DNA of 64,000 bases from Octopus sinensis (GCF_006345805.1 NC_043011.1:26052464-26116463), one strand, 5' to 3'. Counted from the stretch's first letter, positions 5,659 through 57,895 are shown. Notes: a model not told the origin generated them from the letters alone. Numbers and translations are program-made.

Positions 5659-5767
5659 TCAATCAGATGATAACATTGTTGACGAGAATATCTGTTGTAA
5701 TATCTGAGGTAGTTTGTCTGTATCCATGCACACAAAAGCTCGGCCCATTGGAAGCTGTTTTGTCAAC
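5659..5767 (-). CDS. VWA8: VWA8 terminal coding exon (LTKQLPMGRAFVCMDT...QQIFSSTMLSSD*)
   Basis: tatctag acceptor, TGA at 5661-5659; matches the VWA8 C-terminus. Confidence 0.96.
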
Positions 5768-7059
5768 CTAGATAGAAAAACAATATAAAATATAAAGAAA
5801 GAATAATATTTTAAAAATTAGATGCATTTAATTTGGTCCTCTAAAGTACTTTGTCTTAACAAACAATGGTCTTTCGCACTCACATAAACATAGAAACACA
5901 CACACACATATATGAATATATAAATCTGTGTGTACGTATTTATAAATAGATAATTTTTTAAGAGATAAATAAATATTTATACATCCATAATACACACTCT
6001 TTTCCCACGCACTCATTCTACAAAAAATTTATGTACATGATGTATATAAACATATATATGTCTGTATGTATGTATACATTTGTGTGTGTGTGTGTGTATA
6101 TATATATATAATATATATATATATATATACATATATACATCTATATGTGTGTGCGTATATATATATATATCTACACACACACACAAACACACATATATAT
6201 ATAGATAAACACATCTATATACATATATATGCACACAGCACACACAGTTATTATGCTTGCAAATTAATACATGCATGCACACATACACATATATCCCTAT
6301 AGTTTTTATGAAAGAAACCATTAAATCACATGCTTCAAAAAATGAGTGTAGAAACTCTCTCTTTCTTTCTTCTTTCTTTTTTCTTTTTTCTCTCTCTATC
6401 TCTCTCACACACACATACACTCACACACAGAGGCAGAGAGAGAGAGAGAGAAGGTAATGGAGATTATGAAATGCAACATTGTATATTGTGGTATAGGTAT
6501 CCAAGCAAATGTCTCCAATTCTCAGTGGGCAGAAAGTCAGTGATCCACAGATATCAAATCAGATATCCCACATAAAAACAGAGAAGAGATTTAATTGTCT
6601 AGCTTTCTACACACACATACAGATGCACACACTTAGATATACACTCGGCTATACATCAATACATTATATACATATCTACATATATATACCATCATCATCA
6701 TCATCATCATCATTCAACATCCGCTTTCCATGCTGGCATGGGTTGGACAGTTTCATTGAGGACTGGCAAGCCAGTAGGCCACACCAGGCTCCAATCTGAT
6801 CTGGCAATGTTTCTACAGCTGGATGCCCTTCCTAATGCCAATCCCTCCGAGAGTGTAGTGGGTGCTTTTACGTGCCACCAGCACGCAGGCGAGTCAGGCA
6901 GTACTGGTGACAGCCACACTCAAATGGTGGTTTTTATGTGCCACCTGCACAGGAGCCAGTCCAGCGGCACTGCCAATGACTGCTCGAATGTTTTTTCACA
7001 TGCCACCAGACAAGTGCCAGTAAGGCAACACTGGTAACATGGCTGTTTAATTTATATAT

Positions 7060-8521: not shown

Positions 8522-9135
8522 TTTTATTCGTTTCAGAAGAAATGGAAACTGTCCTAAAGGACTATAGACATGGGAGTGATATAGCAAGGACCAAAGAGAA
8601 TCGTTGTAGAAATATTCTTCGAATATTTTTGTGTCACTCTGTCCCTTTACTTTGCTTCTCTTTTAATTTCCTTTCTCTCTCTCTCTTTCTTTCTTCCTCT
8701 CTTTCCTTTCTCTCACTACCATGTGACCCGTGACAACCTAAGGCAGTGTCATTCGTTTTCGCATTGCCTTGGACTGGACCAGTTATGATTTATTATATTA
8801 GATTTATATACCTATATACATATACATGCATGTGTATGTTTGTGTCTCCTCATCTTGACATCCCATGATTGTTGTAAATGAAAGTCAAACATTTCCAGTA
8901 TTCTGCAAAATCATGTTTGCTTGGAAAAAGGTGAGAGCTGGTGACAGGAAGGGCCATAGAATATCTGCCTCACTAAACTCTATCTGACCCATTCAAGCAT
9001 GGAAAAGTGGACATTAAAGCAATGATGATGATGATGATAATGGTGATCTCAACAATAATTTCAGCTGTAATTTTTTAATATTTGAAGACAAACTAAAATT
9101 GTAATTCTTGATAATGGTAAAGAGCTTGCCCTTAC

Positions 9136-9374
9136 CTGACAGCCTGGTCTCCAAGAGATCCAATGAAAATGGCAAAAGCATTCACTTCCTTGTTTTCGGT
9201 GAGCAGTTCTGAGAACTTCCTAGCACTGATACCATACCGTTCAAAGTTGGCATCACTTAGGATGATGACAAAGTGTTCATCAGCTTCTTCTTTGGCAACC
9301 GAGTCGATAGCATGCTTCGTTGCTTCTAAAGTGTTGTCTCCGCTCAGGCAGAACTGTGAGTGCGCATGCATAGT
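9136..9374 (-). CDS. VWA8: VWA8 exon 19 (TMHAHSQFCLSGD...NAFAIFIGSLGDQAV)
   Basis: ttacag acceptor and GTAAGG donor; conserved VWA segment. Confidence 0.97.
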
Positions 9375-9916: not shown

Positions 9917-10671
9917 TATGACGGGCTTCTTTCAGTTTCTGTCAACCAAATCCACTCACAAGGCTTTGGTTGGGCCGAGGCTATAGTAGAAGGCACTTGT
10001 CCAAGGTGCCACGCAGTGGGACTGAACCTGGAACCATGTGGTTCATAAGCAACCTACTTATCCCACAGCCACTCCTATGCCTATATACATGTTTGGGACA
10101 TAAAAGCACACACATAAATCTTAGCAGATGAAATCTCAAAAGTATGAGATAATGCATTATTAATTCAAACTAATTTGAATAAATAAGCATTACATTTTAC
10201 CAACTAATCTGAATGCTAATGGGTTAAAGGTTTTAACATAGTGTGGACTGGATGCTTTCTGGTGCAATGTAAAAAGCATCCTGTCCACACTGTGAAGTGG
10301 TTGGCATTTAGAAGGGTACTTAACTGTAAAAACCATGCCAAAACTGACCTCACCTGAGCTGGTGCCACACAAAAAGCACTCAGTTCATTCTGTGAGGTGA
10401 CTGGTGTTAGGAAGGGCATCGAGTTGTAAAAACCATGCCAAAACTGACCTCACCTATGCTGGTGCCAAACAAAAAGCACTCAGTTCATTCTGGTGTTAGG
10501 AATAGTCTTCTACCTAGCTGACTCCTGTCAAACCATCCAATCCATGCCAGCAAGGAAGGCAGACAAACAATAATGACGATGATGATCACACTAAAACAGG
10601 AAGTTGGTATCATAGAACCAGGGGCAGTTTGAAGCGGGAGGGGGGTTGTATCAAAAGGGTAAACATAATAC

Positions 10672-10770
10672 CTTTAAAACAACAAGTCTCTCTTTCTTGT
10701 TCTTCGGAGCTTGATCAGCTTTCACAAAGGGTGCGTCATAGTTCTCTCCAGAATGACCAAAGATTTCGTA
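10672..10770 (-). CDS. VWA8: VWA8 exon 18 (YEIFGHSGENY...KERLVVLK)
   Basis: ttacag acceptor and GTATTA donor; GHSG motif. Confidence 0.96.
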
Positions 10771-10963
10771 CTGTAAACAGTAAAATACAAAGATTCAGTT
10801 CAACAAATGTTGATAGATTTTAGTGATTGAGCATATTTAAATGTATCAGCTGGTTAATAATTAAATGGAGTATTTCAAGAGATACATGTTACAAAGATAT
10901 TTGAGTATATGTAGAGGAAAATATACACAATTATAAGCTACTATAATACACACACCCACACAC

Positions 10964-11209
10964 ATTGTTATAATTGGGAATGGTCATATTTTGCCAATTA
11001 AACGCATGCACTATATTTTTTTTTTTTGTCTTCACTTCAAATTATTATTACCATTATAGTTTCTCTGTCAAAGGCCTTTTGTCACACATCCTGTGACCTC
11101 TTCAGTGACTCTCTAACCTATATGTCTCCGCTTAGTCCACAGGTGGGATAAAGAGCTGCTGAAGAGGCCACAGGGTGTGTAATGAAAGAGCTTTTGACAA
11201 AGAAACTAA

Positions 11210-11242
<33 letters not shown>

Positions 11243-11314
11243 GCTGAAGTGAAGACCAAATATACAGTGTGTGTGTTTGATTGGCAAAATATGACCGTCC
11301 CTAAGTATAACAAT
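10964..11314. mobile_element. Foldback MITE-like element
   Basis: Imperfect inverted arms over most of its length. Confidence 0.7.
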
Positions 11315-11337
11315 ATCTATTTCAACAAACAATCTTG

Positions 11338-11373
<36 letters not shown>

Positions 11374-11637
11374 CAATTAAGGACAACTACTTAATAAGGA
11401 AAACTTAACAAGAAATTGTCAGGTAGATAGCGTAAAAACCTCATAAGAGAAAAAATTTCGAAAATAATTATTTCTTATTGAACATATTAATTTATATATA
11501 GAGGGCATTATACATACATGCCAGGAGGCATTCTACATACACGCCATACGCTAAGAGGGACAATCAGTCATTTCTACCAAAAATATTACTAATCCCACCG
11601 AATGCAATTTTTCAAAGAAAGACATTTAAAAATATAT

Positions 11638-11685
11638 AGACCTGTATCACAGTGATTTCATACTTACGTAATCATCAGCAGGCCT
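11638..11685 (-). ncRNA. Type I hammerhead ribozyme motif, family 1, copy 1
   Basis: aggccug CUGAUGA uuac-guaa-guau GAAA ucac-u-guga UA^ caggucu: 7-bp helix I (one G-U), intact core, palindromic helix III, AUA triplet; the 10.1-11.1 pair is U-U. Confidence 0.75.
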
Positions 11686-12119
11686 GAATATACTATAAAT
11701 AAACAACGACCCCGCCTCGCTTAAGCCGATCAGCTAACTGATCAACATCAACGAAGCACATGGGTGGGCTTTATATATACTATATCCGGATGAATGGCAA
11801 ACTTTTACGAATTGCATTTCGGGAGAGGAAAAGTTTTTTCGGAATAAAAATTTAGCAATTAAGGACAACTACTTAATAAGGAAAACTTAACAAGAAATTG
11901 TCAGGTAGATAGCGTAAAAACCTCATAAGAGAAAAAATTTCGAAAATAATTATTTCTTATTGAACATATTAATTTATATATAGAGGGCATTATACATACA
12001 TGCCAGGAGGCATTCTACATACACGCCATACGCTAAGAGGGACAATCAGTCATTTCTACCAAAAATATTACTAATCCCACCGAATGCAATTTTTCAAAGA
12101 AAGACATTTAAAAATATAT

Positions 12120-12167
12120 AGACCTGTATCACAGTGATTTCATACTTACGTAATCATCAGCAGGCCT
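12120..12167 (-). ncRNA. Type I hammerhead ribozyme motif, family 1, copy 2
   Basis: Identical to copy 1, offset by 482 bp. Confidence 0.75.
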
Positions 12168-13034
12168 GAATATACTATAAATAAACAACGACCCCGCCTC
12201 GCTTAAGCCGATCAGCTAACTGATCAACATCAACGAAGCACATGGGTGGGTTTATATATACTATATCCGGATGAATGGCAAACTTTTACGAATTGCATTT
12301 CGGGAGAGGAAAAGTTTTTTCGGAATAAAAATTTAGCAATTAAGGACAACTACTTAATAAGGAAAACTTAACAAGAAATTGTCAGGTAGATAGCGTAAAA
12401 ACCTCATAAGAGAAAAAATTTCGAAAATAATTATTTCTTATTGAACATATTAATTTATATATAGAGGGCATTATACATACATGCCAGGAGGCATTCTACA
12501 TACACGCCATACGCTAAGAGGGACAATCAGTCATTTCTACCAAAAATATTACTAATCCCACCGAATGCAATTTTTCAAAGAAAGACATTTAAAAATATAT
12601 AGACCTGTATCACAGTGATTTCATACTTACGTAATTAGTAATGGGATTAGTAATATTTTTGGTAGAAATGACTGATTGTCCCTCTTAGCGTATGGCGTGT
12701 ATGTAGAATGCCTCCTGGCATGTATGTATAATGCCCTCTATATATAAATTAATATGTTCAATAAGAAATAATTATTTTCGAAATTTTTTCTCTTATGAGG
12801 TTTTTACGCTATCTACCTGACAATTTCTTGTTAAGTTTTCCTTATTAAGTAGTTGTCCTTAATTGCTAAATTTTTATTCCGAAAAAACTTTTCCTCTCCC
12901 GAAATGCAATTCGTAAAAGTTTGCCATTCATCCGGATATAGTATATATAAACCCACCCATGTGCTTCGTTGATGTTGATTAGTTAGCTGATCGGCTTAAG
13001 CGAGGCGGGGTCGTTGTTTATTTATAGTATATTC

Positions 13035-13082
13035 AGGCCTGCTGATGATTACGTAAGTATGAAATCACTGTGATACAGGTCT
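13035..13082 (+). ncRNA. Type I hammerhead ribozyme motif, family 1, inverted copy
   Basis: Exact reverse complement of 12120-12167. Confidence 0.75.
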
Positions 13083-13248
13083 ATATATTTTTAAATGTCT
13101 TTCTTTGAAAAATTGCATTCGGTGGGATTAGTAATATTTTTGGTAGAAATGACTGATTGTCCCTCTTAGCGTATGGCGTGTATGTAGAATGCCTCCTGGC
13201 ATGTATGTATAATGCCCTCTATATAAATATATATATATATATATATAC

Positions 13249-13337
<89 letters not shown>

Positions 13338-13408
13338 GAAAACAAAAGAATGAGACCTCAATATTAGGTAAATAGAGGAATTTATAGTTTAGGACAATCA
13401 GTAAGTCA

Positions 13409-13477
13409 TCATAATAGGACTCAGAGTTTCAAATGCCGGAGCTAAGAGCTACGATGCATTCTCATCAGCTATTATGA
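13409..13477 (-). ncRNA. Type I hammerhead ribozyme motif, family 2, copy 1
   Basis: ucauaauag CUGAUGA gaaugc..gcauuu GAAA cuc-u-gag UC^ cuauuauga: perfect 9-bp helix I, intact core, GUC triplet, palindromic helix III. Confidence 0.85.
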
Positions 13478-13753
13478 CAATAAACGCTATAAAAAATCCA
13501 TTGAATAAAATGGAAATTACTCTAGTAGGTAGGAAAAAATATTTAAAAAATACATGCAACCATATTCTCACAATACATAGACATAAAAACCTCCTGCGTT
13601 TATAATGTCTACATATGTACACACTAACAAACATATATAACAATATATATGTATTTGCCCATACACACACAAACATATATGTACATTTACGTATTCATAC
13701 ACGTATAACACACACACATATATATATTCAATGTGTTTTTTATAGTGTCTATT

Positions 13754-13824
13754 GTCATAATAGCAAATGAGAATGCATTGTAGCTCTTAGCTCCGACATT
13801 TGAAACTCTGAGTCCTATTATGAC
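13754..13824 (+). ncRNA. Degenerate family-2 hammerhead (core CAAAUGA); second copy at 14478-14548
   Basis: Helices retained, but two substitutions in the CUGAUGA core; probably inactive. Confidence 0.65.
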
Positions 13825-13844
13825 AACTTACTAATTGTCCTAAA

Positions 13845-13902
<58 letters not shown>

Positions 13903-13977
13903 ACATATATATATATATATATACAAACAAATATATACAATATAAATATATATATATATATACATATAATAATAATA

Positions 13978-14060
<83 letters not shown>

Positions 14061-14131
14061 GAAAACAAAAGAATGAGACCTCAATATTAGGTAAATAGAG
14101 GAATTTATAGTTTAGGACAATCAGTAAGTCA

Positions 14132-14200
14132 TCATAATAGGACTCAGAGTTTCAAATGCCGGAGCTAAGAGCTACGATGCATTCTCATCAGCTATTATGA
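14132..14200 (-). ncRNA. Type I hammerhead ribozyme motif, family 2, copy 2
   Basis: Identical to 13409-13477, offset by 723 bp. Confidence 0.85.
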
Positions 14201-14568
14201 CAATAAACGCTATAAAAAATCCATTGAATAAAATGGAAATTACTCTAGTAGGTAGGAAAAAATATTTAAAAAATACATGCAACCATATTCTCACAATACA
14301 TAGACATAAAAACCTCCTGCGTTTATAATGTCTACATATGTACACACTAACAAACATATATAACAATATATATGTATTTGCCCATACACACACAAACATA
14401 TATGTACATTTACGTATTCATACACGTATACACACACACACATATATATATTCAATGTGTTTTTTATAGTGTCTATTGTCATAATAGCAAATGAGAATGC
14501 ATTGTAGCTCTTAGCTCCGACATTTGAAACTCTGAGTCCTATTATGACAACTTACTAATTGTCCTAAA

Positions 14569-14604
<36 letters not shown>

Positions 14605-15091
14605 ACACATATATATATATATATATATATACAAACAAATATATACAAATATAAATATATATATACAAACAAATAATTACAGAGGTATCAAGTTGCTGGA
14701 TCAAGTAATGAAGGTCACAGAGAGGGTCATAGCCCAACTAATTAGAGAGAGAATCAGTTTAGATGAGATGCAGTTTGGGTTCATGCCAGGGAAAAGCACC
14801 ATTGATGCTATATTCCTGGTAAGACAGCTGCAGGAGAAATACCTAGCCAAAGATAAACCTCTGTACCTGACTTTCATTGACATGGAGAAAGCCTTTGACA
14901 GGGTCCCCCGATCCCTTATCTGGTGGTCAATGAGGAAACTAGGGATAGATGAATGGTTAGTGAGAGCTGTGCAAGCCATGTACAGGGAAGCTGTTAGTAA
15001 GGTGAGGGTTGGCAAAGAGTACAGTGAAGAATTCTGGGTAGAGGTAGGGGTCGACCAAGGTTCAGTCCTCAGCTGCCTCCTATTTATCATA

Positions 15092-15274
15092 ACGGGAAAG
15101 TTTACGAAAATAAACAAAAGACGAAGGCAGGTGGAGTACAAACAAACAAATGTATTAGTATAGCGCTCAGGAATAGAAATAGAAAAAGTCTTTTACGTTT
15201 CGAGCCTACGCTCTTCAACAGAAAGATACACAGAAAAAAACAAAGAGAGAAAAAAATGCGTGTAGGAGCTAACG
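15092..15274 (-). mobile_element. 183-bp HHR-bearing mini-element with ATCATA target-site duplication
   Basis: ATCATA at 15086-15091 and 15275-15280; related copy near 45058-45245. Confidence 0.75.
15189..15226 (-). ncRNA. Minimal hammerhead motif, variant core CUGUUGA
   Basis: ucuuu CUGUUGA a-gagc-guag-gcuc GAAAC GUA^ aaaga; A6U substitution. Confidence 0.6.
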
Positions 15275-16157
15275 ATCATAGTTCTCCAGGCAATAACAGA
15301 GGAATTCAAGACTGGATGCTCCTGTGAGCTCCTCTATGCTGATGACCTTGCTCTAATTGCTGAGTCACTATCAGAACTGGAGGAGAAGTTTCAGATGTAG
15401 AAGCAAGGATTAGAATCGAAGGGCCTTAGAGTCAACCTAGCTAAAACAAAAGCCCTGATAAGTAGGAAGGTAGACAAACCACAAACGCCTTCATGTAGAT
15501 GGCCCTGCTCAATCTGTAGAAAAGGTGTAGGTAGAAACTCTATAAGATGTACCCAGCGTAAGCTATGGACACATAAGAGGTGCAGCAATGTCAAAAGAAG
15601 GCTAACTAGGAAGATAGTTTTTGTATGTGGCAGATGCTCAGGAGCAATAAACATAGAAATGTGTAGAGAACAACTTCTGTCACATTCCAAGGAGAAAAAC
15701 TAGAAGTGGTTGATAGCTTCGGCTACCTAGGTGACCAAGTCAGTAGCGGGGGCGGGTGTGCTGAAAGTGTAACTGCTAGAGTAAGAATAGCCTGGGCAAA
15801 GTTCAGAGAGCTCTTACCTCTGCTGGTAACAAAAGGCCTCTCACTCAGAGTAAAAGGCAGACTGTATGATGCATGTGTATGAACAGCCATGCTACATTTC
15901 AGTGAAACATGGGCCATGACTGCTGAGGACTTGCATAAGCTTGCAAGGAATGAAGCCAGTATGCTCCGATGGATGTGTAATGTCAGTGTACATACTCAAC
16001 AGAGTGTAAGTACTTTGAGAGAAAAGTTGGACCTAAGAAGCATCAGCTGTGGTGTGCAAGAGAGACGATTACACTGGTATGGTCGTGTGGTGAGAATGGA
16101 TGAAGATAGGTGTGTGAAAAAGTGCAGACACACAAACATATATACACACACATGCAC

Positions 16158-16204
<47 letters not shown>

Positions 16205-16634
16205 ATAAAGGATTGACAGTAAGGTCAAAACAATGTGAAGTAAATGTAAGGTAAATCATAAGAAAAGAAATATATGAATTAATGTAGACTTACCTTGCAT
16301 TCAATATTTCGGGGTCATGAGCCCATTTTCAAGATAATAAACAAATACTTCGCATTGTTATGGCCTTACCCAATATATTCTATTCAATACTTCATAGTAA
16401 TTATTCCATTATAATATATATATATATATATACATACATATATATGCATACATATATATAGATACAAACATATATATGTATAAATATGTATATATATATA
16501 TACATACACACATATATATATACATGCATATCTGTGTGTGTAGTATTTTGTATAAGAATGCATATTGTTTTGCTTTGTAAATGATCACATGACATTACAA
16601 TGAACCAATAGAAACAAACACCAATTAGGCATAC

Positions 16635-16793
16635 CTTCAGTTTGGTATCGTAGCCTTCAAGCGCTTCCATTACCATCAACACTGCACTCATTTCTCTTTC
16701 GAGCCGACGATCGTGACCGTTGAAGCGGTACATGCTGCCAGATACATCAACGACAAGGCGGAGACGCTTCGGTAGTTCCATTGGTGCTCCAAG
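16635..16793 (-). CDS. VWA8: VWA8 exon 17, start of VWA domain with MIDAS-region DVSGS (LGAPMELPKRLRLVVDVSGSMYRFN...KLK)
   Basis: tcacag acceptor and GTATGC donor; DxSxS motif. Confidence 0.97.
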
Positions 16794-18304
16794 CTGTGAT
16801 AGACGTGAGAGGGAGAGACAGTAGTAGTAATAGTAGTAGTAGTAGTAGTAGTAGGAAGAGGAGGAGGAGTAAATATCAGTAGATGTAGTTGATGATTAGT
16901 TCCTCCTCATTTATCAGACGAGATGGAGAAGAGTTTGGAAGCGGAAAGGAAAACAAAAACATGTGAAGCAATCAATCAATTAGTTCTCGTCCATTATTTC
17001 ATGAAATACACTGAGAGGTATAAATTTGCCCAAGTGGGGAAATTAGTAGACTGTTAATACCTGATTCCTGGGTTCAAGTCTAGAGCAAATAATTGCTTCT
17101 TTTTTTCTGTTGTTCTTTGTTTTTTGGGGGGTTTTTTCACATTTTTGTTCTTTTAGCTTTTTACTATTTGTTTTTTTTTACTAGTTTCAGTCACTGGACT
17201 GCAGCCATACTGGGGCATTTCTTTAAAAGGTTTAGTCAAACAAATTTACTTCAGTACTTATTTTTAAGTTTAGTACTTATTCTATGGGACTCTTTTGCTG
17301 AAGTTCCAGAGACCAGAGACATAAGCAAACACCAATTGTCAAGTGGAGCGGTGGGGGGCATGCACAAATACACACACACATACATACATATGTATATATA
17401 TGTATATATGTATGTATCTTTTACTTGTTTCAGTCATGATACTGCGGCCATGCTGGGGTACCACCATGTATAATTGTTAGTTAAATGTATCAATTCTTGT
17501 ACTTTTTTTTTCAAGCCTGGTACTTATTCTATTAGTCACTTTTGCTGAACTGCTAGGTAACAGGACATAAACACACCAACACCAGCTGTCAAATAGAGAT
17601 GGGGGGGGACAAACACAGACATAAAGACACACATATACATAGATATATATGTGCATATAAAATGGGCTTCTTTCAGTTTCCGTCTACCAAATTCACTCAC
17701 AAGCTTTGGTTAGTCCAACGCTATAGTAGAAGAGACTTGCTCAAGGTGCCATGCAGTGGAACTGAACATGGAACTATGTGGTTGGGAGGCAGGCTTGTTG
17801 CCACACAGCCATGCCTGCTCCTAAAAAGAAATTCATGTCAGAAATATAAATATATATATGACAGGCTTCCACACAGTCTTCATCTACTAAATTCACTCAA
17901 ACTGCTTAGTTTTTTGTCAATGATTGCATGACTGTATTCTTTTATTCTTTTACTTGCTTCAGTCATTTCACTGTGGCCATGCTGGAGTATTGCTCGGAAG
18001 GGTTTTAGTCAAACAAATCAAACCCAGGACTTTTTTTCTTTAAAGCCTAGAACTTATTGTCTTTCTCGTTTGCCAAACTGCTAAGTTACGGGGAAGTAAA
18101 CACATCAACACCAGTTGTCAAGTGGTGATGGGGGGAGGACAAACACAGACACAAAGACAAACATAGATATAAGCATACATATATACATATATATATATAC
18201 ATAGTTAATCCAAACATGAAAACACAAAGAGAAAACACAACAACGCGAGGACGTGGAACAAGTATAGTATTATTGGACACTCAGGAAAGAAGGAAAGAAG
18301 GAAG

Positions 18305-18339
18305 GCTTAACGTTTCGAGCGTAGCTCTTCGTCAGAAAC
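18305..18339 (-). ncRNA. Minimal hammerhead motif (Penelope-type)
   Basis: guuu CUGACGA a-gagc-uac-gcuc GAAAC GUU^ aagc; intact core, only a 4-bp helix I. Confidence 0.6.
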
Positions 18340-18959
18340 ATAGGAAAAGGAAAGATCCAAAGAAGGGAAGATGGAGAAAAAAAAATCGCCAACGGTACAC
18401 AAGCAGTCACATTTTGAATATATACATATATATATATAGGCGTAGGAGTGGCTGTGTGGTAAGTAGCTTGCTTACCAACCACATGGTTCCGTGTTCAGTC
18501 CCACTGCATGGCACCTTGGGCAAGTGTCTTCTTGTGTATAGGAAAGAAAGTTATTTTATTCCACACAGGTAGAAATGTAGTAAAAAGAAGCTGAAATGCA
18601 CTGGGAGTCATTTAGATGATTTATTTTTAAATAAATCAGCTTCACAGATTTTTTTGGGTTTTCAAGAGTTAAGTGAGATAGAAAGATCTGGGGTTATGCG
18701 ACAACTGGAGTCTGAAATTTCTCTTGTTTTTATGGAGAGAACATGGCCCAAATTAGTATCTGTTTAGGATACAATTTGATTGGCAGAGAATGATCACATG
18801 ATTAGGCTTAGAAATTTTTGTTAGCTCCACCCTCCCCTGCTGCCACCACTATGTTAATGTCATATGACTAGACAAGGATGAGTGACAGTTCCAAACAATC
18901 AAGGCTCTCTAAATTTAATTTGTCAAGTGGTAGAGTGGATAGGAATTGTTTGTATGTTG

Positions 18960-21090: not shown

Positions 21091-22088
21091 TTTATGAAAG
21101 TCTTATACATACAACTGAAAGAGCTACTAATAGTTTTATGCCTATATGACACTTTAACTCAGCATATTTGTAAAATATGTCATGTATCTCCAAACAATCT
21201 TTCAAGTTCTGTTTATGCATTACTCTTTACTCTTTACTTGTTTCAGTCATTTGACTGCGGCCATGCTGGGGCACCACCTTTAGTCGAGCAAATCGACCAC
21301 GGGACTTATTCTTTGTAAGCCCAGTACTTATTCTATCGGTCTCTTTTGCCGAACCGCTAAGTGACGGGGGACGTAAACACACCAGCATCGGTTGTCAAGC
21401 AATGCTAGGGTGACAAACATATACACACATACTTATATATATATAGATACGACAGGCTTCTTTCAGTTTCCGTCTACCAAATCCACTCACAAGGCATTGG
21501 TCGGCCCGGGGCTATAGCAGAAGACACTTGCCCAAGATGCCACGCAGTGAGACTGAACCCGGAACCATAAAAACAACGATGCTGGACAGTGAGAAAAAAA
21601 GCAAAAAAATGAAAAGAAAACCATGAAGGCTGATGCAAAAAGTGGAATGAGAAGAAAGAAACAAAAGCAAGATACCAAGATTCCCGACCTCTTTGATTGC
21701 AGAATCTACAATTAATGCAACAGGTACAGAACAAAAATATGTCAAAGTCTGCTCGACAGCAACTCAATCCAGAACAGGTGGTGTCCTCCAGTTCGACAGA
21801 GGGATCCTGTTCTTGTGTTTGCACCTGCAAAGAATTTCAAATTTCCTTCCCTTTTCTGCCAAACTAATATTCACTATTGATTAGCCACACCTCAACCATG
21901 TGCCTCATTCACTGGGACCACCCCAATCTTCATCTCTTAACCATCTGTCTCATTTTTCAATTTCTCACAAACTTACCTACCTACACTCTCTGTTCCTCTA
22001 ACCCTTTCCCTCACTGTCTTGCCCTCACCCTTTCCTTCTCTCACTCCCTTGGTCTCACCCTCTCTTTCTCTAGATCTCTAATTCTTAC

Positions 22089-22214
22089 CTCAGGTTCTTG
22101 CTCTCCTCGGCGCTTATAAATTGCTTTCTCACCAGCAATTCCTTCAATCAACTTTGTTTCATCAAGATCTCCCTGAGGCTGCTGTTTTAACCATTGACGT
22201 TCCTTGCCTTTTGC
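22089..22214 (-). CDS. VWA8: VWA8 exon 16 (AKGKERQWLK...GEKAIYKRRGEQEPE)
   Basis: ctccag acceptor and GTAAGA donor; conserved. Confidence 0.97.
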
Positions 22215-23588
22215 CTGGAGAAACAAAACAAAACCAAAAATAAGATAAGACAACAAAAATCTTTTCAATAATAAGCACAAGGCCTGATATTTTGAAGAAG
22301 GAGGCAAGTTCATTATATCAACCCCCAGTACTTGACTGGTACTTATTTCATTGACCCCAAAAAGATAAAGTCAACCTCAGCGGAATTGAACTCAGGACAG
22401 AAAACTGGAAGAAATGCTACTAAGCATTTAGCTTGCTGTGTGAATGATTTTGCCAGCTCACAACAGCAGCAGCAGTAGTTCAAAGCCAGAACTTTTGTGG
22501 GAGAAAGTTAGCTGACATCATCAGCTCCTAGGCTTGACTGATACTTTTTATCAACCCTAAAACGATATCAAAAGCAGTCCTGTATAGCTTTTGTTTACCA
22601 AATTTCACTCACAAGGCATTGGTTAACCTGAGTCTTTATAATAGAAGAGATTTGCTTAAAGTACCATGCAGCGAGATCAAACATGAAAACAAATGGTTAC
22701 AAAGTGAACAGCTTGTTCTCTGTTTAGTATATATATTTGTTACATTTAGCTAAGTTGTAGAAATATGAGGTACATTTTGGGGAGTTAAATAGATTAAAAA
22801 GCACCATCCGATCGTGGCCGTTGCAGCTTCGCCTGGCCCCCGTGCCGGTGGCACGTAAAAAGCACCATCCGATCGTAGCCGTTGCCAGCCCCGTCTGGCA
22901 CCTGTGCAGGTGGTACGTAAAAAGCACCCACTACACTCACGGAGTGCTTGGCGTTAGGAAGGGCATCCAGCCGTAGAAACATTGCCAGATCAGACTGGGC
23001 CTGGTGCAGCCTTCTGGCTTCCCAGACCCCAGTTGAACCGTCCAACCCATGCTAGCATGGAAAGCGGATGCTAAATGATGATGATGATGATGATGATACA
23101 GCTGTCAAGCTCAGAAAAGCAGCAGCCAGCATAATAACAGTAGAAAAAAAGTGTCGGCTTAAAGTGAGTGTGGGGTTATTGGAGAGCAGCCTGTATCAGC
23201 ATTTTCTAAAAGATCATATGGCTGTTTAACAGAATAACATCAGGGCACCAGAGAAGGTTATGAAATAAATGTGAAATGAACCTAAGTAAATGAAATACTT
23301 GTGCCACTAACTATTTGCAATAAATTCTCAGATATTTTTACGAAGGAGATGTCAGAGGACCAAGATATACTCTCTTTTACTCTTTTATTTGTTTCAGTCA
23401 TTTGACTGTGGCCATGCTAGAGCACTGCCTTTAGTCAAGCAAATCAACCCCAGGGCTTATTATTTGTAAGCCTAGTACTTATTCTATCGGTCTCTTTCGC
23501 CGAACTGCTAAGTTAGGGGGACGTGAACACACCAGCATCGGTTGTCAAGCGATGGTAGGGGGGACAAATACAGACACACAAATATATG

Positions 23589-23642
<54 letters not shown>

Positions 23643-24291
23643 ATATTAATGAATAAAATAAAACATATGCATATATATAAACATATATGTACGTACATAT
23701 ATATATATATATACATACGACAGGCTTCTTTCAGTTTCTGTCTACCAAATCCACTCACATGGCTTTGGTCGGCCCGAGGCTATAGTAGAAGACACTTGCC
23801 CAAGATGCCATACAGTGGGACTGATCCCAGAACCATGTGGTTGGTAAGCAAGCTACTTACCACACAGCCACTCCTATGCCTATATGTAACACATTGCTGT
23901 ACTTGAGAAAACCCACCCACCATAACAGAATTGAGATCCTAAAACCAAGGTACCATGTAAAAAGCATTGCTATGGGTGGTGGAGCCAAATAAAAAGCACT
24001 GGTGCTGGTGCCACACAGAAAGCACTGATGCTAGTGCCATGTAAAAAGCACTGGTGATGGTACCGCATCAAAAGTACTAGTGATGGTGCCATGTAAAAAG
24101 TATTCAGTACCCTCTATAAAGAGGTTGGCATTAGGAAGGGCATCCAGCTGTAAAAAGCAAGCCAAAACAGACTATGGAACTTGGTGCAGCCCCTGGCCTT
24201 GCTAGTTCCTGTCAAGCCATCCAATCTATGCCAATATAGAAAACGTACATTAATTGTTGATGACAATGATGATGATGATGACATTACCTAC

Positions 24292-24400
24292 CTGGAGAGT
24301 ATCAAGTATCACCCGGAGTGACTGCACTTGACGTCGGACAGACTGGGCAAAACTGTCATAGGTTTCAGCATCATATTCACTCATATTAATCTCCCTTAAT
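24292..24400 (-). CDS. VWA8: VWA8 exon 15 (LREINMSEYDAETY...VRRQVQSLRVILDTLQ)
   Basis: gagcag acceptor and GTAGGT donor; conserved. Confidence 0.96.
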
Positions 24401-24782
24401 CTGCTCAGATAAATAAACAAATACAAATCAGATTAGAGAGAAATATTAGAATTTCATTTATTTGTAAATCAACATGTTTTAATTCAATCATCTGTGTATC
24501 AGATTTAAAAAAGTTTTTTTAATCTTTTTTTTCTTTTAATAGCCTCATATATATGTGTCATGGGTGGGGAAGCTTCTCACTGTCTCATTTAATATGGGAT
24601 ATCTGATTTTTCTTCCAGCGTTTTTCTTCAGCAAGTGCCTTATCATAGTACTGAGATATTTACTCGTAACTTTTTGATGTGCTATTTGGGAAATTACACT
24701 TAAGATGAATTAAGATATATTCCATTGCACTCATGCCTATCTTACTGTCTATACATGCATATATGTATGCATGCATATGAAA

Positions 24783-45025: not shown

Positions 45026-45056
<31 letters not shown>

Positions 45057-46413
45057 GTGAGAATTTACAACAAAAAAACAAAAGACGAAGACGGGTGTGT
45101 AAAGAACAAACAGATGTATTAGTTTAACGCTCAGGAAGTGAGAAAGTCTTTTACGTTTCGAGCCTGCGCTCTTTGATAGAAAGGAACACAGAAATAAACA
45201 GGGAGAGAAAATAAAAAAGGTTTAGTGGTTAGCGATCTATCATGGCAAATGTATATATACATACAATAAACTTCTTTCAGTTTCCATCTACCAAGTCCAT
45301 TCACAAGGCTTTAGTCAGCCTGACACTATAGTAGAAGACACTTGGCCAAGGTGTCAAGCAGTGGGACTGAACCTGGAACCATGTGGTTGGGAAGCAAACT
45401 TCTTACCACACTCCACTCTTGCACCTATGTATGTATGTATGTATATATGTATGTATGAGCTACAACACAGTTTTCATCTTCCAAATTCCACACACAAAGC
45501 ATTAGTCAACCCAAAGTTACAGTATTATAGAAGACACTTGCACAAAGTGTCATGCAGTGGGACCGAACTCAGAACCACACAGTTGTACAGCAAACTTCCT
45601 AACCACATGGCTATGCTAACGCCTATTCTTTATATATTTAAATTTTTTCTGTTATTTCAAAGCCAAGACTTTACCAGACTTAAAAAATAACAATCGATTC
45701 GATCGACCGAGGATGAAGACATTGGGTACAGGGCGGGTGGGGGGGAAGAGATGCAAGACAGACAAACTAACAATAACAGCAACAACAATAACCACGGCAA
45801 CAATAGCAAATAACAATTGTAACAAGATTTCTGCAAACCTTAATGCGCTTTCCATGCACAGTTTAAAAGAAAAGTGATGAGTTATCATATAAATAAAGTT
45901 GACACTAAAAATTAATCTGTTTTTGCTCAGGTTTCTTTCTTCTTCACTTAAAAACATTGCTTTCATTTCATATTTTTTTTTTTTTTGATTCTTTCACACT
46001 TCTTTCTCTTCACCTTAAACCTACCGTTCCACTCTGCCCTCTTTGTATGTTTTTTTCTTATTGTTTCTGCTGCTGCCATCGCTGTTTTTGTTTGCTGCTG
46101 TCATTATTGTGGCTATTTTTTCTTCTTGTTTCTCCAGGAAGATCGGTGGCAGAGATGGGATGGGAGGCGGGGTTTCATTTCTCAGGCTTTCATACTGCAT
46201 ACAACTTAAGATTTACATATTTCTGTACCGTTCTGTACTGTAATGTGCATGGTACTTTTTCATTCATTCACTATTGTTGTTGTTTTGCACTATGCTTGTG
46301 CAGCAGCAGTAGTAGTAGTAGTAGTAGTAGCGGTGGTGGCGGTAGTAGTGGTGGTGGTGATAGTAGTAGTAGTGGTGGTGGTAGTGGTGGTGGTGGTAGT
46401 GGTGGTGGTGGTA

Positions 46414-57084: not shown

Positions 57085-57895
57085 AGGTACCAATATTCGA
57101 ATCAATTACATGATCATTACAAACAGCTGACCAACATCTATACCAATCATGTGGTCACTACAATCAGCTGAGCAATATCTATGTTAATCATGTGGTCAGT
57201 AAAATCAGCTGACCAACAACTACGTCAATCATGTGATTACAAAATTCAGCTGACCAACATCTATGCCAATCATGTGGTCACTATTATCAGGTGACTAACA
57301 TTGACACCAATGACATGATCATTACAAACAGTGCTCAATATCTACATGACATGGTCACTATAAACAATGATTAATATCTACATGATGTGATCGCTACAAT
57401 CACCTTGTCTTCACAAACAAGTATATATATATAAGTAGAGTTACAATAATCAGTATGCTGTTATAATAGTACTCAGAGTTTCAAATGCCAGAGCTAAGGG
57501 CTACAATGCATTCTCATCGGCTATTAATGGCAACAGACACTATGAAAAGCCATCGAATAAAACATCCACACCAAAGAGATCACGAAAATTACATGACAAT
57601 CATTCATGCCAAACCTCTCATGATAATCAACTGACCAACATCTACACCATCAAAGTGGCTACTGCAGTTAATCAGTTGACCAACATCACACTTTCCATGT
57701 GGTCACTACAACCAATCAGTTGATCAAAATTCACACCATCCATGTAGTCACTACAATAATTCAGTTGGCCAACATCTACAACAACCAAGTGGTTGTTAGA
57801 ATAAATCAACTGACCAGCATCAACATCATCCATGTAGTCACAACAGTAAATCAACTGGCCAACATCCACACCACTGATACTGCGGTCATCAATAT
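57085..57895. repeat. Minisatellite (41-bp block and 45-bp block) interrupted by an HHR-bearing fragment
   Basis: Cores at 57124, 57165, 57206, 57247, 57288 and at 57628, 57673, 57717, 57762, 57807, 57852. Confidence 0.85.
57464..57526 (-). ncRNA. Diverged family-2 hammerhead (core CCGAUGA, GUA triplet)
   Basis: Clear homology to 13409-13477 with a U4C core change. Confidence 0.6.

What the first reader, a model, noticed from the sequence alone, without database searches (positions are those of the whole stretch)
10771..16634. One 5.9-kb intron carries four intact-core hammerheads on the pre-mRNA strand, between the first two VWA-domain exons
Seen: minus-strand HHRs at 11638, 12120, 13409 and 14132, a variant at 15189, and several foldbacks. 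Inference: co-transcriptional cleavage before splicing could cut the transcript ahead of the last three exons. The gene would then have to splice across a severed intron, be protected by the inverted arms, or be down-tuned. This is a possible ribozyme and antisense control module on a conserved gene.
Basis: inference. Interest (0 to 1): 0.75.

Follow-up and report, generated by a model that had tools for sequence, protein, structure and literature searches.

The report
Repeat-borne hammerhead motifs in an intron
The four hammerhead ribozyme motifs on the sense strand of this intron are real, but they sit in recently inserted repeats of known kinds, so this is most likely mobile-element cargo and not a gene control device.

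Summary
Observation confirmed. The intron 10771-16634 (5,864 bp, GT..AG) lies on the minus strand between an exon encoding a DxSxS (MIDAS) motif and the first of the last three exons. It holds four complete hammerhead motifs on the pre-mRNA strand. Predicted cuts follow 11645, 12127, 13418 and 14141. These four and a fifth copy on the plus strand (13035-13082) are the only full motifs in the 64 kb; about 0.003 are expected by chance.

The four copies are two sequences, each duplicated locally. Family A is a 481/482-bp tandem array that resembles an animal non-LTR retrozyme, followed by an inverted duplication. Family B is a ~130-nt element in inverted pairs within a 723-bp tandem duplication. 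The "variant" at 15189 is a decayed minimal hammerhead of the Penelope-element type (A6 to U) in a SINE-like element.

The same intron in two related genomes is 924 and 1,266 bp and has none of this. In predicted folds three of the four motifs are buried in long duplexes with antisense copies transcribed first. All four have a weak helix III.

Cleavage competing with splicing is physically possible and has precedent. Nothing here supports a selected control module. This is an ordinary new member of a known kind.

The parts
16635..16793 (-). Exon upstream of the intron. It encodes LGAPMELPKRLRLVVDVSGSMYRF...DTKLK, with a DxSxS MIDAS motif.
   Evidence: tblastn of 120 homologous fragments. The donor AAG|GTATGC was read.
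10771..16634 (-). The intron: 5,864 bp, GT..AG, phase 0. It is almost wholly made of repeats.
   Evidence: The orthologous introns are 1,266 bp (L001) and 924 bp (L002).
10672..10770 (-). Exon downstream of the intron (YEIFGHSGENYDAPFVKADQAPKNKKERLVVLK), the first of the last three exons.
11362..12635 (-). Family A tandem array: 2.65 units of 481/482 bp, 99-100% identical, 33.8% G+C, with the hammerhead on the gene's sense strand.
   Evidence: The 482-nt monomer between cleavage sites folds with z = -5.0.
11638..11685 (-). Hammerhead A1: AGGCCUG-CUGAUGA-U.UAC-GUAA-GUA.U-GAAA-UCA(CUG)UGA-UA|CAGGUCU. The predicted cut follows A at 11645, 874 nt upstream of the acceptor. It is the only sense copy left unmasked in the predicted pre-mRNA fold.
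12120..12167 (-). Hammerhead A2, same sequence as A1. The predicted cut follows 12127. All 48 of its bases pair with the antisense copy at 13035-13082 in the predicted fold.
12642..13236 (+). Inverted duplication of family A (1.24 units). With 11966-12560 it forms a 595-nt palindrome that is 99% complementary, with an 81-nt loop. The junction lies at the TTACGTAA octamer of helix II, which cuts off a third sense hammerhead.
   Evidence: (I1-I5).
13035..13082 (+). Fifth intact family A hammerhead, on the plus strand and so antisense to the gene. In the pre-mRNA it supplies the mask for A2.
13220..14661 (-). Family B block: a 723-bp unit duplicated in tandem (95.6% identity). Each unit holds microsatellites and a pair of 128-nt inverted arms that are 91% complementary.
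13406..13480 (-). Hammerhead B1. Helix I is 12 bp, the core is CUGAUGA, helix II is a 31-nt extended stem, then GAAA and helix III ACUC-U-GAGU. The predicted cut follows C at 13418.
   Evidence: Rfam Hammerhead_1 scores 19.8 bits over the full model. The motif is sequestered in the predicted fold.
14129..14203 (-). Hammerhead B2, identical to B1. The predicted cut follows 14141.
13725..13852 (+). Antisense arm of B unit 1. Its hammerhead core is dead (CAAAUGA). In the pre-mRNA it is transcribed before the sense arm.
14449..14576 (+). Antisense arm of B unit 2, with the same dead core.
15090..15290 (-). SINE-like element of about 180-200 nt inserted into a LINE fragment. This is a minimal hammerhead of the Penelope-element type with A6 changed to U.
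   Evidence: No Rfam hammerhead hit.
14690..16100 (+). LINE reverse-transcriptase fragment, antisense to the gene and split by the SINE-like insert.
   Evidence: ORF. Homologues carry PF00078.
10964..11314 (.). MITE-like foldback with 57-nt arms (82% complementary) and an inner hairpin at 11073-11194.
   Evidence: (I25). One search gives sub-threshold miRNA-like hits only.

Best explanation
The intron grew from roughly 1 kb to 5.9 kb through lineage-specific insertion and local duplication of repeats. Two of the repeat families carry their own type I hammerhead ribozyme.

Family A is a 481/482-bp tandem repeat. It has low G+C, a strongly self-paired monomer and one hammerhead per unit. This is the layout of animal non-LTR retrozymes and hammerhead satellites, where the ribozyme cuts multimeric transcripts into monomers that a cellular ligase can circularise. 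Family B is a ~130-nt hammerhead element, present here as an inverted pair that was then duplicated.

The hammerheads serve the repeats and not the host gene. Their sense orientation reflects two insertion events.

The expected effect on the host transcript is small, for three reasons.
1. Both motifs have the weak, near-palindromic helix III typical of slow, dimer-dependent metazoan hammerheads.
2. For three of the four motifs an antisense copy is transcribed first, and the predicted fold locks the motif in a duplex of 128 to 595 bp.
3. The one free motif (A1) lies only 874 nt upstream of the acceptor.

Shown here: the motifs, the repeat structure, absence from two orthologous introns, and the predicted masking. 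Inferred: that the motifs self-cleave at all, that cleavage is slow, and that there is no selected function for the host.
For: - Only five full hammerhead motifs occur in 64 kb, all in this intron, against about 0.003 expected.
- Family A has a tandem period of 481/482 bp with 99-100% identical units. Family B has a 723-bp duplication at 95.6% identity and 128-nt inverted arms at 91%.
- A decayed family B copy lies elsewhere in the window (57412-57562, core CCGAUGA), so B is a dispersed repeat.
- The family A monomer is 33.8% G+C. It folds at z = -5.0, and helix I closes the molecule.
- These features match those published for animal non-LTR retrozymes: type I hammerhead, tandem repeats of 150-450 bp, low G+C, self-paired RNA. 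A U-U mismatch at the base of helix II is also seen in the axolotl HHR_Amex2 motif (PMC7229834).
- The orthologous introns in L001 and L002 are 1,266 and 924 bp. They share no similarity with the inserts and hold no hammerhead.
- In pre-mRNA MFE folds, A2 has 48 of 48 bases paired to antisense and B1 and B2 have 73 of 75. A1 folds locally.
- Helix III pairing probability is at most 0.02 in the monomers. The dimers gain about 4 to 8 kcal/mol.
- About 43% of Xenopus retrozyme copies are intronic.
Against: - No RNA data exist for this locus, so neither cleavage nor its absence is shown.
- Family A gets no Rfam hammerhead hit. It has no relatives in any collection I could search, so its status rests on the motif rules and the context alone.
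- The unit length of 481/482 bp is slightly above the published 150-450 bp range.
- Family B is not in simple head-to-tail tandem, so it is not a textbook retrozyme.
- MFE folds ignore co-transcriptional kinetics, helicases and proteins, so the masking may be incomplete in vivo.
- In Xenopus, retrozymes are under-represented in introns after normalising for size. This hints that such insertions can be mildly harmful, meaning they do affect their hosts.
Confidence: 0.7

Rival explanations
1. One reading: the sense hammerheads and their antisense arms form a selected module that tunes the host gene. Co-transcriptional cleavage cuts off the last three exons unless the arms mask the ribozymes.
For: Four intact cores lie on the pre-mRNA strand. 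Each of three motifs is preceded by an antisense copy. Intronic ribozymes that compete with splicing are known (PMC10919898).
Against: The repeats are absent from two orthologous introns. The copies are 96-100% identical, so they are very recent duplications. The four motifs trace to only two insertion events, so the shared orientation carries no statistical weight. Helix III is weak. Intronic retrozyme copies are commonplace.
Confidence: 0.06
2. Hitch-hiking. The repeats use the host gene's transcription. Double cleavage of the pre-mRNA or the excised intron would release a 482-nt unit (12126 to 11645) and a 723-nt unit (14140 to 13418). Each would have 5'-OH and 2',3'-cyclic phosphate ends, which a tRNA ligase could circularise. 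This does not exclude the best explanation.
For: The tandem sense copies have a self-paired monomer closed by helix I. Retrozyme circular RNAs of this kind are abundant in invertebrates, mussels included (PMC7229834).
Against: A2, B1 and B2 are masked in the predicted fold, and release of a unit needs two cuts. There are no expression data. The 723-nt unit is mostly microsatellite and inverted arms.
Confidence: 0.2
3. Only family B is a true hammerhead. The family A motif is a chance look-alike inside an ordinary satellite.
For: There is no Rfam hammerhead hit even in a 101-nt search. Helix II is only 3 bp plus a U-U mismatch, with a pairing probability of 0.25. About 0.003 chance motifs per 64 kb still amounts to on the order of a hundred per gigabase-sized genome. 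No relatives are available to test covariation.
Against: All invariant core positions are present. Helix II carries a GNRA tetraloop, helix III is near-palindromic, and helix I is 7 bp and closes the monomer fold. There is exactly one motif per tandem unit, as in retrozymes. The same U-U feature is seen in the self-cleaving axolotl motifs.
Confidence: 0.2
4. Part of the structure is an assembly artefact. Fold-back chimeric long reads or collapsed or expanded tandem copies could create the 99% palindrome and inflate the number of copies.
For: The arms are 595 nt and 99% complementary, with a short loop and a junction at a palindromic octamer. The tandem units are near-identical.
Against: The arms are not 100% identical, and the phase of the array differs between the two sides. 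Family B shows 4-9% divergence between copies, as real duplicates would. Even if part is artefact, at least one copy of each hammerhead would remain.
Confidence: 0.12
5. The long intronic hairpins are what matters. They would be substrates for dsRNA editing (ADAR) or dicing into small RNAs that silence families A and B, and the hammerheads would be incidental.
For: The predicted pre-mRNA fold holds a 595-bp near-perfect duplex and 128-bp duplexes (duplex energy -190.7 kcal/mol for one B pair).
Against: There are no small-RNA or editing data. Such inverted repeats arise by chance in repeat-rich introns.
Confidence: 0.12

Closest known systems
Animal non-LTR retrozymes and hammerhead satellites (Cervera and de la Pena 2020, PMC7229834). 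From my own knowledge, the classic examples are newt satellite 2, Schistosoma Sm-alpha and the cave-cricket pDo500 repeats.
   Same: Family A has a type I hammerhead with an open helix I and one motif per unit. It is arranged head to tail, has low G+C (33.8%), a strongly self-paired monomer and a weak near-palindromic helix III that favours dimers. Like the axolotl HHR_Amex2 motif, it has a U-U mismatch at the base of helix II.
   Different: The unit is 481/482 bp, just above the published 150-450 bp. Only 2.65 units are present, followed by an inverted duplication. Genome-wide copy number, expression and circular RNA are unknown. Family B is a ~130-nt element in inverted pairs and not a simple tandem, and its helix II is unusually long (31 nt).
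Minimal hammerheads of Penelope-like elements (Cervera and de la Pena 2014, PMC4209133)
   Same: The motif at 15188-15226 and its relatives at 18305-18339 and ~45100 share three features with this class. One base is bulged before helix II, helix III is reduced to ACGU and can only form in a dimer, and helix I is short.
   Different: The copy in this intron has A6 changed to U, and the copy at 45.1 kb has three core changes. Only the copy at 18305-18339, outside the finding, keeps an intact core (CUGACGA). No Penelope reverse transcriptase or GIY-YIG ORF was seen next to them. They sit in a SINE-like element of about 180 nt.
[quoted passage not shown]
   Same: A self-cleaving motif on the sense strand of an intron in a conserved protein-coding gene. 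Its cleavage could compete with splicing.
   Different: Those ribozymes are single-copy and conserved at the orthologous position across large clades. The motifs here are young repeat copies that are absent from the orthologous intron of two relatives.

Membership tests
Hammerhead ribozyme | Invariant core: C3 U4 G5 A6 N7 G8 A9, G12 A13 A14, the A15.1-U16.1 pair, and H17 not G | tested here: met
   All positions are present in A1, A2, A(+), B1 and B2. They are not all present in the 15189 variant (A6 to U), the B antisense arms (CAAAUGA) or the 57.4-kb copy (CCGAUGA).
Hammerhead ribozyme | Three helices around the core | tested here: met
   Family A has helix I of 7 bp, helix II of 3 bp plus a U-U mismatch with a GUAA loop, and helix III of 4 bp with a 3-nt loop. 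Family B has helices of 12 bp, 6 bp plus an extension, and 3 bp. Helix III has a pairing probability of at most 0.02 in the monomer and forms between molecules in predicted dimers.
Hammerhead ribozyme | Score at or above the curated Rfam threshold | tested here: not met
   There is no hit at gathering score. Family B scores 19.8 bits against 34 for RF00163, over the full model, with E = 0.009 only in a 111-nt search. Family A gets no hammerhead hit.
Hammerhead ribozyme | Tertiary contact between helix I and loop 2, which fast natural hammerheads need | tested here: inconclusive
   Family A has a GNRA loop 2 and a 2-nt bulge after 7 bp of helix I. Family B has a continuous 12-bp helix I and a long helix II. 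Neither shows the canonical loop motif, and no three-dimensional test was possible.
Hammerhead ribozyme | Covariation that supports the helices | tested here: inconclusive
   Family A copies are 99-100% identical. The three distinct family B sequences show C-G, U-G and U-A at one helix II pair and G-U changes in helix I. These changes sit at CpG sites, and ordinary CpG decay explains them as well as selection does.
Hammerhead ribozyme | Site-specific self-cleavage | not testable with these tools
   This needs in vitro transcription or mapping of RNA ends.
Animal non-LTR retrozyme | Type I hammerhead inside head-to-tail repeats of about 150-450 bp | tested here: met
   Family A has 2.65 units of 481/482 bp with one motif per unit, slightly above the published size range. 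Family B does not meet this feature as a simple tandem. Its 723-bp period comes from a local duplication.
Animal non-LTR retrozyme | Low G+C and a highly self-paired monomer RNA | tested here: met
   G+C is 33.8%. The monomer MFE is -128.2 kcal/mol against -98.2 +/- 6.0 for shuffles, z = -5.0.
Animal non-LTR retrozyme | Many genomic copies, expressed as linear and circular RNA | not testable with these tools
   The source genome is not in the searchable collections. Family A has only this one locus in the window.
Conserved intronic regulatory ribozyme (HH9, HH10 or CPEB3 type) | Conservation at the orthologous intron position in related species | tested here: not met
   L001 (87% identity in the flanking exon) and L002 (79%) have introns of 1,266 and 924 bp. 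These show no similarity to the inserts and hold no hammerhead motif.

The most novel reading that the evidence does not exclude
The sense-strand hammerheads, each preceded by an antisense copy, act as a conditional switch. When the long duplexes are unwound or edited, the ribozymes are freed. They then cut the intron, lower the output of the last three exons, and release circular RNAs from the intron of a host gene.
Probability: 0.04. Interest if true: 0.7.

Novelty: new member of a known kind. Interest (0 to 1): 0.25.

Why it matters
As it stands this is a clean annotated example, in an unidentified AT-rich and microsatellite-rich animal genome, of hammerhead-bearing repeats swelling an intron of a conserved gene about five-fold. 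That phenomenon is already documented in several animal phyla.

It would matter more if RNA data showed cleavage of the host pre-mRNA. The locus would then be a natural experiment on two questions. One is how well splicing tolerates a severed intron. The other is whether antisense copies can neutralise a ribozyme in cis. Both have so far been studied mainly with synthetic constructs and the CPEB3 ribozyme.

Tried and rejected
- **Rfam.** A gathering-threshold scan of the whole window found nothing. A permissive scan of 10000-17500 gave only microsatellite-driven miRNA-like hits and a weak HH9 hit at 17234-17308 (16.7 bits, E = 4.1), which I dismissed as chance.
- **Strict descriptor.** It missed family A because of the U-U closing pair, so I relaxed it. 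A further hit at 1780-1867 has a helix III of only 2 bp and a T-rich helix I, and I judged it to be chance.
- **Source genome and other repeat copies.** Exact-ORF look-ups found nothing. Two metagenome pattern scans gave 0 hits. A protein search with a family A ORF found no candidates.
- **Naming the organism.** A search with the LINE reverse transcriptase returned only unnamed ENA contigs.
- **Confirming the gene as VWA8.** Pfam gave no hit on 186 aa of joined exons, and PDB gave only chance hits. The VWA8 name is therefore unverified. What is shown is the DxSxS motif, wide conservation across metazoan contigs, and one homologue that JGI names as a vWA-domain protein.
- **tRNA-derived SINE heads.** None found.
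- **Covariation in family B.** CpG decay explains it.

Full report
**1. Gene and intron**

tblastn of homologous protein fragments retrieved with the two flanking exons places minus-strand exons at ~24289-24411, ~22086-22220, 16635-16793, 10672-10770, ~9135-9374 and ~5665-5769. The stretch 10771-16634 is a 5,864-bp, phase-0, GT..AG intron (sequence read). The upstream exon encodes DVSGSM, a DxSxS MIDAS motif.

I could not confirm the VWA8 name. Pfam and PDB searches of 186 aa of joined exons gave nothing significant.

**2. Are the hammerheads there?**

Yes. I scanned with a generic descriptor: CUGANGA, helix II, GAAA, A15.1-U16.1, H17 not G, and helix I of at least 6 bp. It finds five motifs in the whole 64 kb on both strands, and all five are in this intron.

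| Motif | Strand | Span | Predicted cut follows |
|---|---|---|---|
| A1 | minus | 11638-11685 | 11645 |
| A2 | minus | 12120-12167 | 12127 |
| B1 | minus | 13406-13480 | 13418 |
| B2 | minus | 14129-14203 | 14141 |
| A(+) | plus | 13035-13082 | 13075 |

In 300 Markov simulations of the window the mean was 0.003 motifs.

Three caveats apply.
- The four sense motifs are two sequences, each duplicated locally, so there are two independent occurrences.
- Rfam does not call any of them at gathering score. Family B aligns to the full Hammerhead_1 model at 19.8 bits against a threshold of 34, and only in a 111-nt search. Family A gets no hammerhead hit.

**3. Anatomy of the two motifs**

- **Family A** reads AGGCCUG / CUGAUGA / U-UAC-GUAA-GUA-U / GAAA / UCA-CUG-UGA / UA| / CAGGUCU. 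Helix I is 7 bp. Helix II is 3 bp under a GNRA loop with a U-U mismatch at its base. Helix III is near-palindromic.
- **Family B** has a 12-bp helix I, a 31-nt extended helix II and helix III ACUC-U-GAGU.

In the monomers, helix III has a pairing probability of at most 0.02, and helix II of family A only 0.25. Predicted dimers form an intermolecular helix III and gain about 4 to 8 kcal/mol. A weak palindromic helix III and dependence on dimers are the published norm for metazoan type I hammerheads (PMC4209133; PMC7229834). A U-U mismatch at the base of helix II is described for the self-cleaving axolotl HHR_Amex2 motif.

**4. What carries them**

Family A is a 481/482-bp tandem array at 11362-12635, with 2.65 units at 99-100% identity. 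It is followed by an inverted duplication at 12642-13236. The two together give a 595-nt palindrome that is 99% complementary. The junction falls at the TTACGTAA octamer of helix II and cuts off a third sense copy. The 482-nt monomer between cleavage sites is 33.8% G+C. It folds far better than shuffled versions (z = -5.0), and helix I closes the molecule.

Family B is a ~130-nt element. Here it forms an inverted pair of 128-nt arms at 91% complementarity. The sense arm has an intact core and the antisense arm has CAAAUGA. The pair sits in a 723-bp unit that was duplicated in tandem at 95.6% identity. A solo, decayed copy with core CCGAUGA lies at 57412-57562, so B is a dispersed repeat.

**5. 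The 'variant' at 15189**

This is UCUUU-CUGUUGA-A-GAGC-GUAG-GCUC-GAAAC-GUA|AAAGA. It has the architecture of the minimal hammerheads of Penelope-like elements: one bulged base before helix II, and helix III reduced to ACGU (PMC4209133). It also has A6 changed to U.

It lies in a SINE-like element of about 180 nt that interrupts a plus-strand LINE reverse-transcriptase fragment. Homologous copies lie at ~45050-45225, with three core changes, and at 18200-18385, with an intact CUGACGA core in the next intron upstream. Rfam finds no hammerhead in it. I read it as a dead relic.

**6. Rest of the intron**

The remainder is a MITE-like foldback (10964-11314) and microsatellites. Almost the whole intron is repeat.

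**7. Comparison with relatives**

Two contigs from related genomes carry the same exons. L001 has 87% amino-acid identity in the upstream exon and L002 has 79%. Their orthologous introns are 1,266 and 924 bp. Neither has any similarity to the inserts or any hammerhead motif. The inserts are therefore lineage-specific, and the near-identity of the copies says the duplications are recent.

**8. Would they cut the pre-mRNA?**

Transcription runs from high to low coordinates, so each antisense copy is made before its sense partner.
- In the MFE fold of 13300 to 11300, A2 is fully paired (48 of 48 bases) with the antisense copy at 13035-13082. A1 folds locally with helices I and II. One antisense copy can mask only one of the two sense copies at a time.
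- In the fold of 14720 to 13340, both B motifs are buried, with 73 of 75 bases paired to antisense arms.
- The only free motif, A1, is 874 nt from the acceptor. At commonly cited polymerase II elongation rates of a few kb per minute (my own knowledge), the polymerase covers that distance in well under a minute.
- Published co-transcriptional rates for invertebrate retrozyme hammerheads are about 0.1 to 0.8 per minute.
- Slow ribozymes in introns did not affect splicing in the work summarised in PMC10919898.

I therefore expect at most a small loss of product. This is inference. MFE folding ignores kinetics and proteins.

**9. Comparison with what is known**

Family A meets the testable features of animal non-LTR retrozymes. 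Its unit is slightly larger than published, and copy number and expression cannot be tested here. Family B is a hammerhead-bearing short repeat that is not in simple tandem.

Intronic location is common. In Xenopus, 42-44% of retrozyme copies are intronic, although they are under-represented after normalising for size. The conserved intronic ribozymes (HH9, HH10, CPEB3) differ in being conserved at the orthologous position, and that test fails here.

**10. Verdict**

The finding is a new member of a known kind, of modest interest, and RNA-end mapping would settle it.

No relatives of either family could be retrieved. The organism remains unidentified.

Noticed in passing
window 13035-13082 (+): A fifth intact-core family A hammerhead lies on the plus strand, antisense to the gene. 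It would need antisense transcription to act, and in the pre-mRNA its complement masks the sense copy A2.
   Followed up: yes
window 11966-12560 and 12642-13236: A 595-nt palindrome, 99% complementary, with an 81-nt loop. Its junction sits at the TTACGTAA octamer inside helix II of the hammerhead. It could be a real fold-back duplication, a source of long dsRNA for editing or small RNAs, or an assembly artefact.
   Followed up: partly
window 18305-18339 (-): A minimal hammerhead of the Penelope-element type with an intact core (GUUU-CUGACGA-A-GAGC-UAC-GCUC-GAAAC-GUU|AAGC). It is in the next intron upstream, also on the sense strand, inside a copy (18200-18385) of the same SINE-like family as the 15189 variant.
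   Followed up: partly
window 45050-45225 (-): Another copy of the SINE-like element, about 80% identical to 15090-15290. Its hammerhead core has decayed to CUAUCAA.
   Followed up: partly
window 57412-57562 (-): A solo, decayed copy of the family B hammerhead element (core CCGAUGA, helix I degraded), about 80-84% identical to the arms in the intron.
   Followed up: partly
window 532, 8180, 10522, 24206, 25847, 37917, 51518, 63034: A dispersed short repeat containing GGATGGTTTGACAGGAG matches 8 times (0.14 expected). Seven of the eight matches are on the minus strand, which is the sense strand of the gene wherever they fall inside it. This looks like a marked orientation bias for a SINE-like family.
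   Followed up: no
L001 6823-8088; L002 10160-11083: The orthologous introns in two related genomes are 1,266 and 924 bp. The L002 gene is compact throughout, with downstream introns of about 340 and 1,300 bp against about 1,300 and 3,400 bp in the window.
   Followed up: partly
window 14690-16100 (+): A LINE reverse-transcriptase fragment (its homologues carry PF00078) lies antisense to the gene and is split at 15090-15290 by the SINE-like insert. The best database hit is labelled Escherichia coli, evidently a contaminated record.
   Followed up: partly
window 11073-11194: A strong hairpin lies inside the MITE-like foldback 10964-11314. It gives sub-threshold miRNA-family hits (mir-9261 34 bits against a gathering score of 86), which I take to reflect the inverted repeat and not a microRNA gene.
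   Followed up: no
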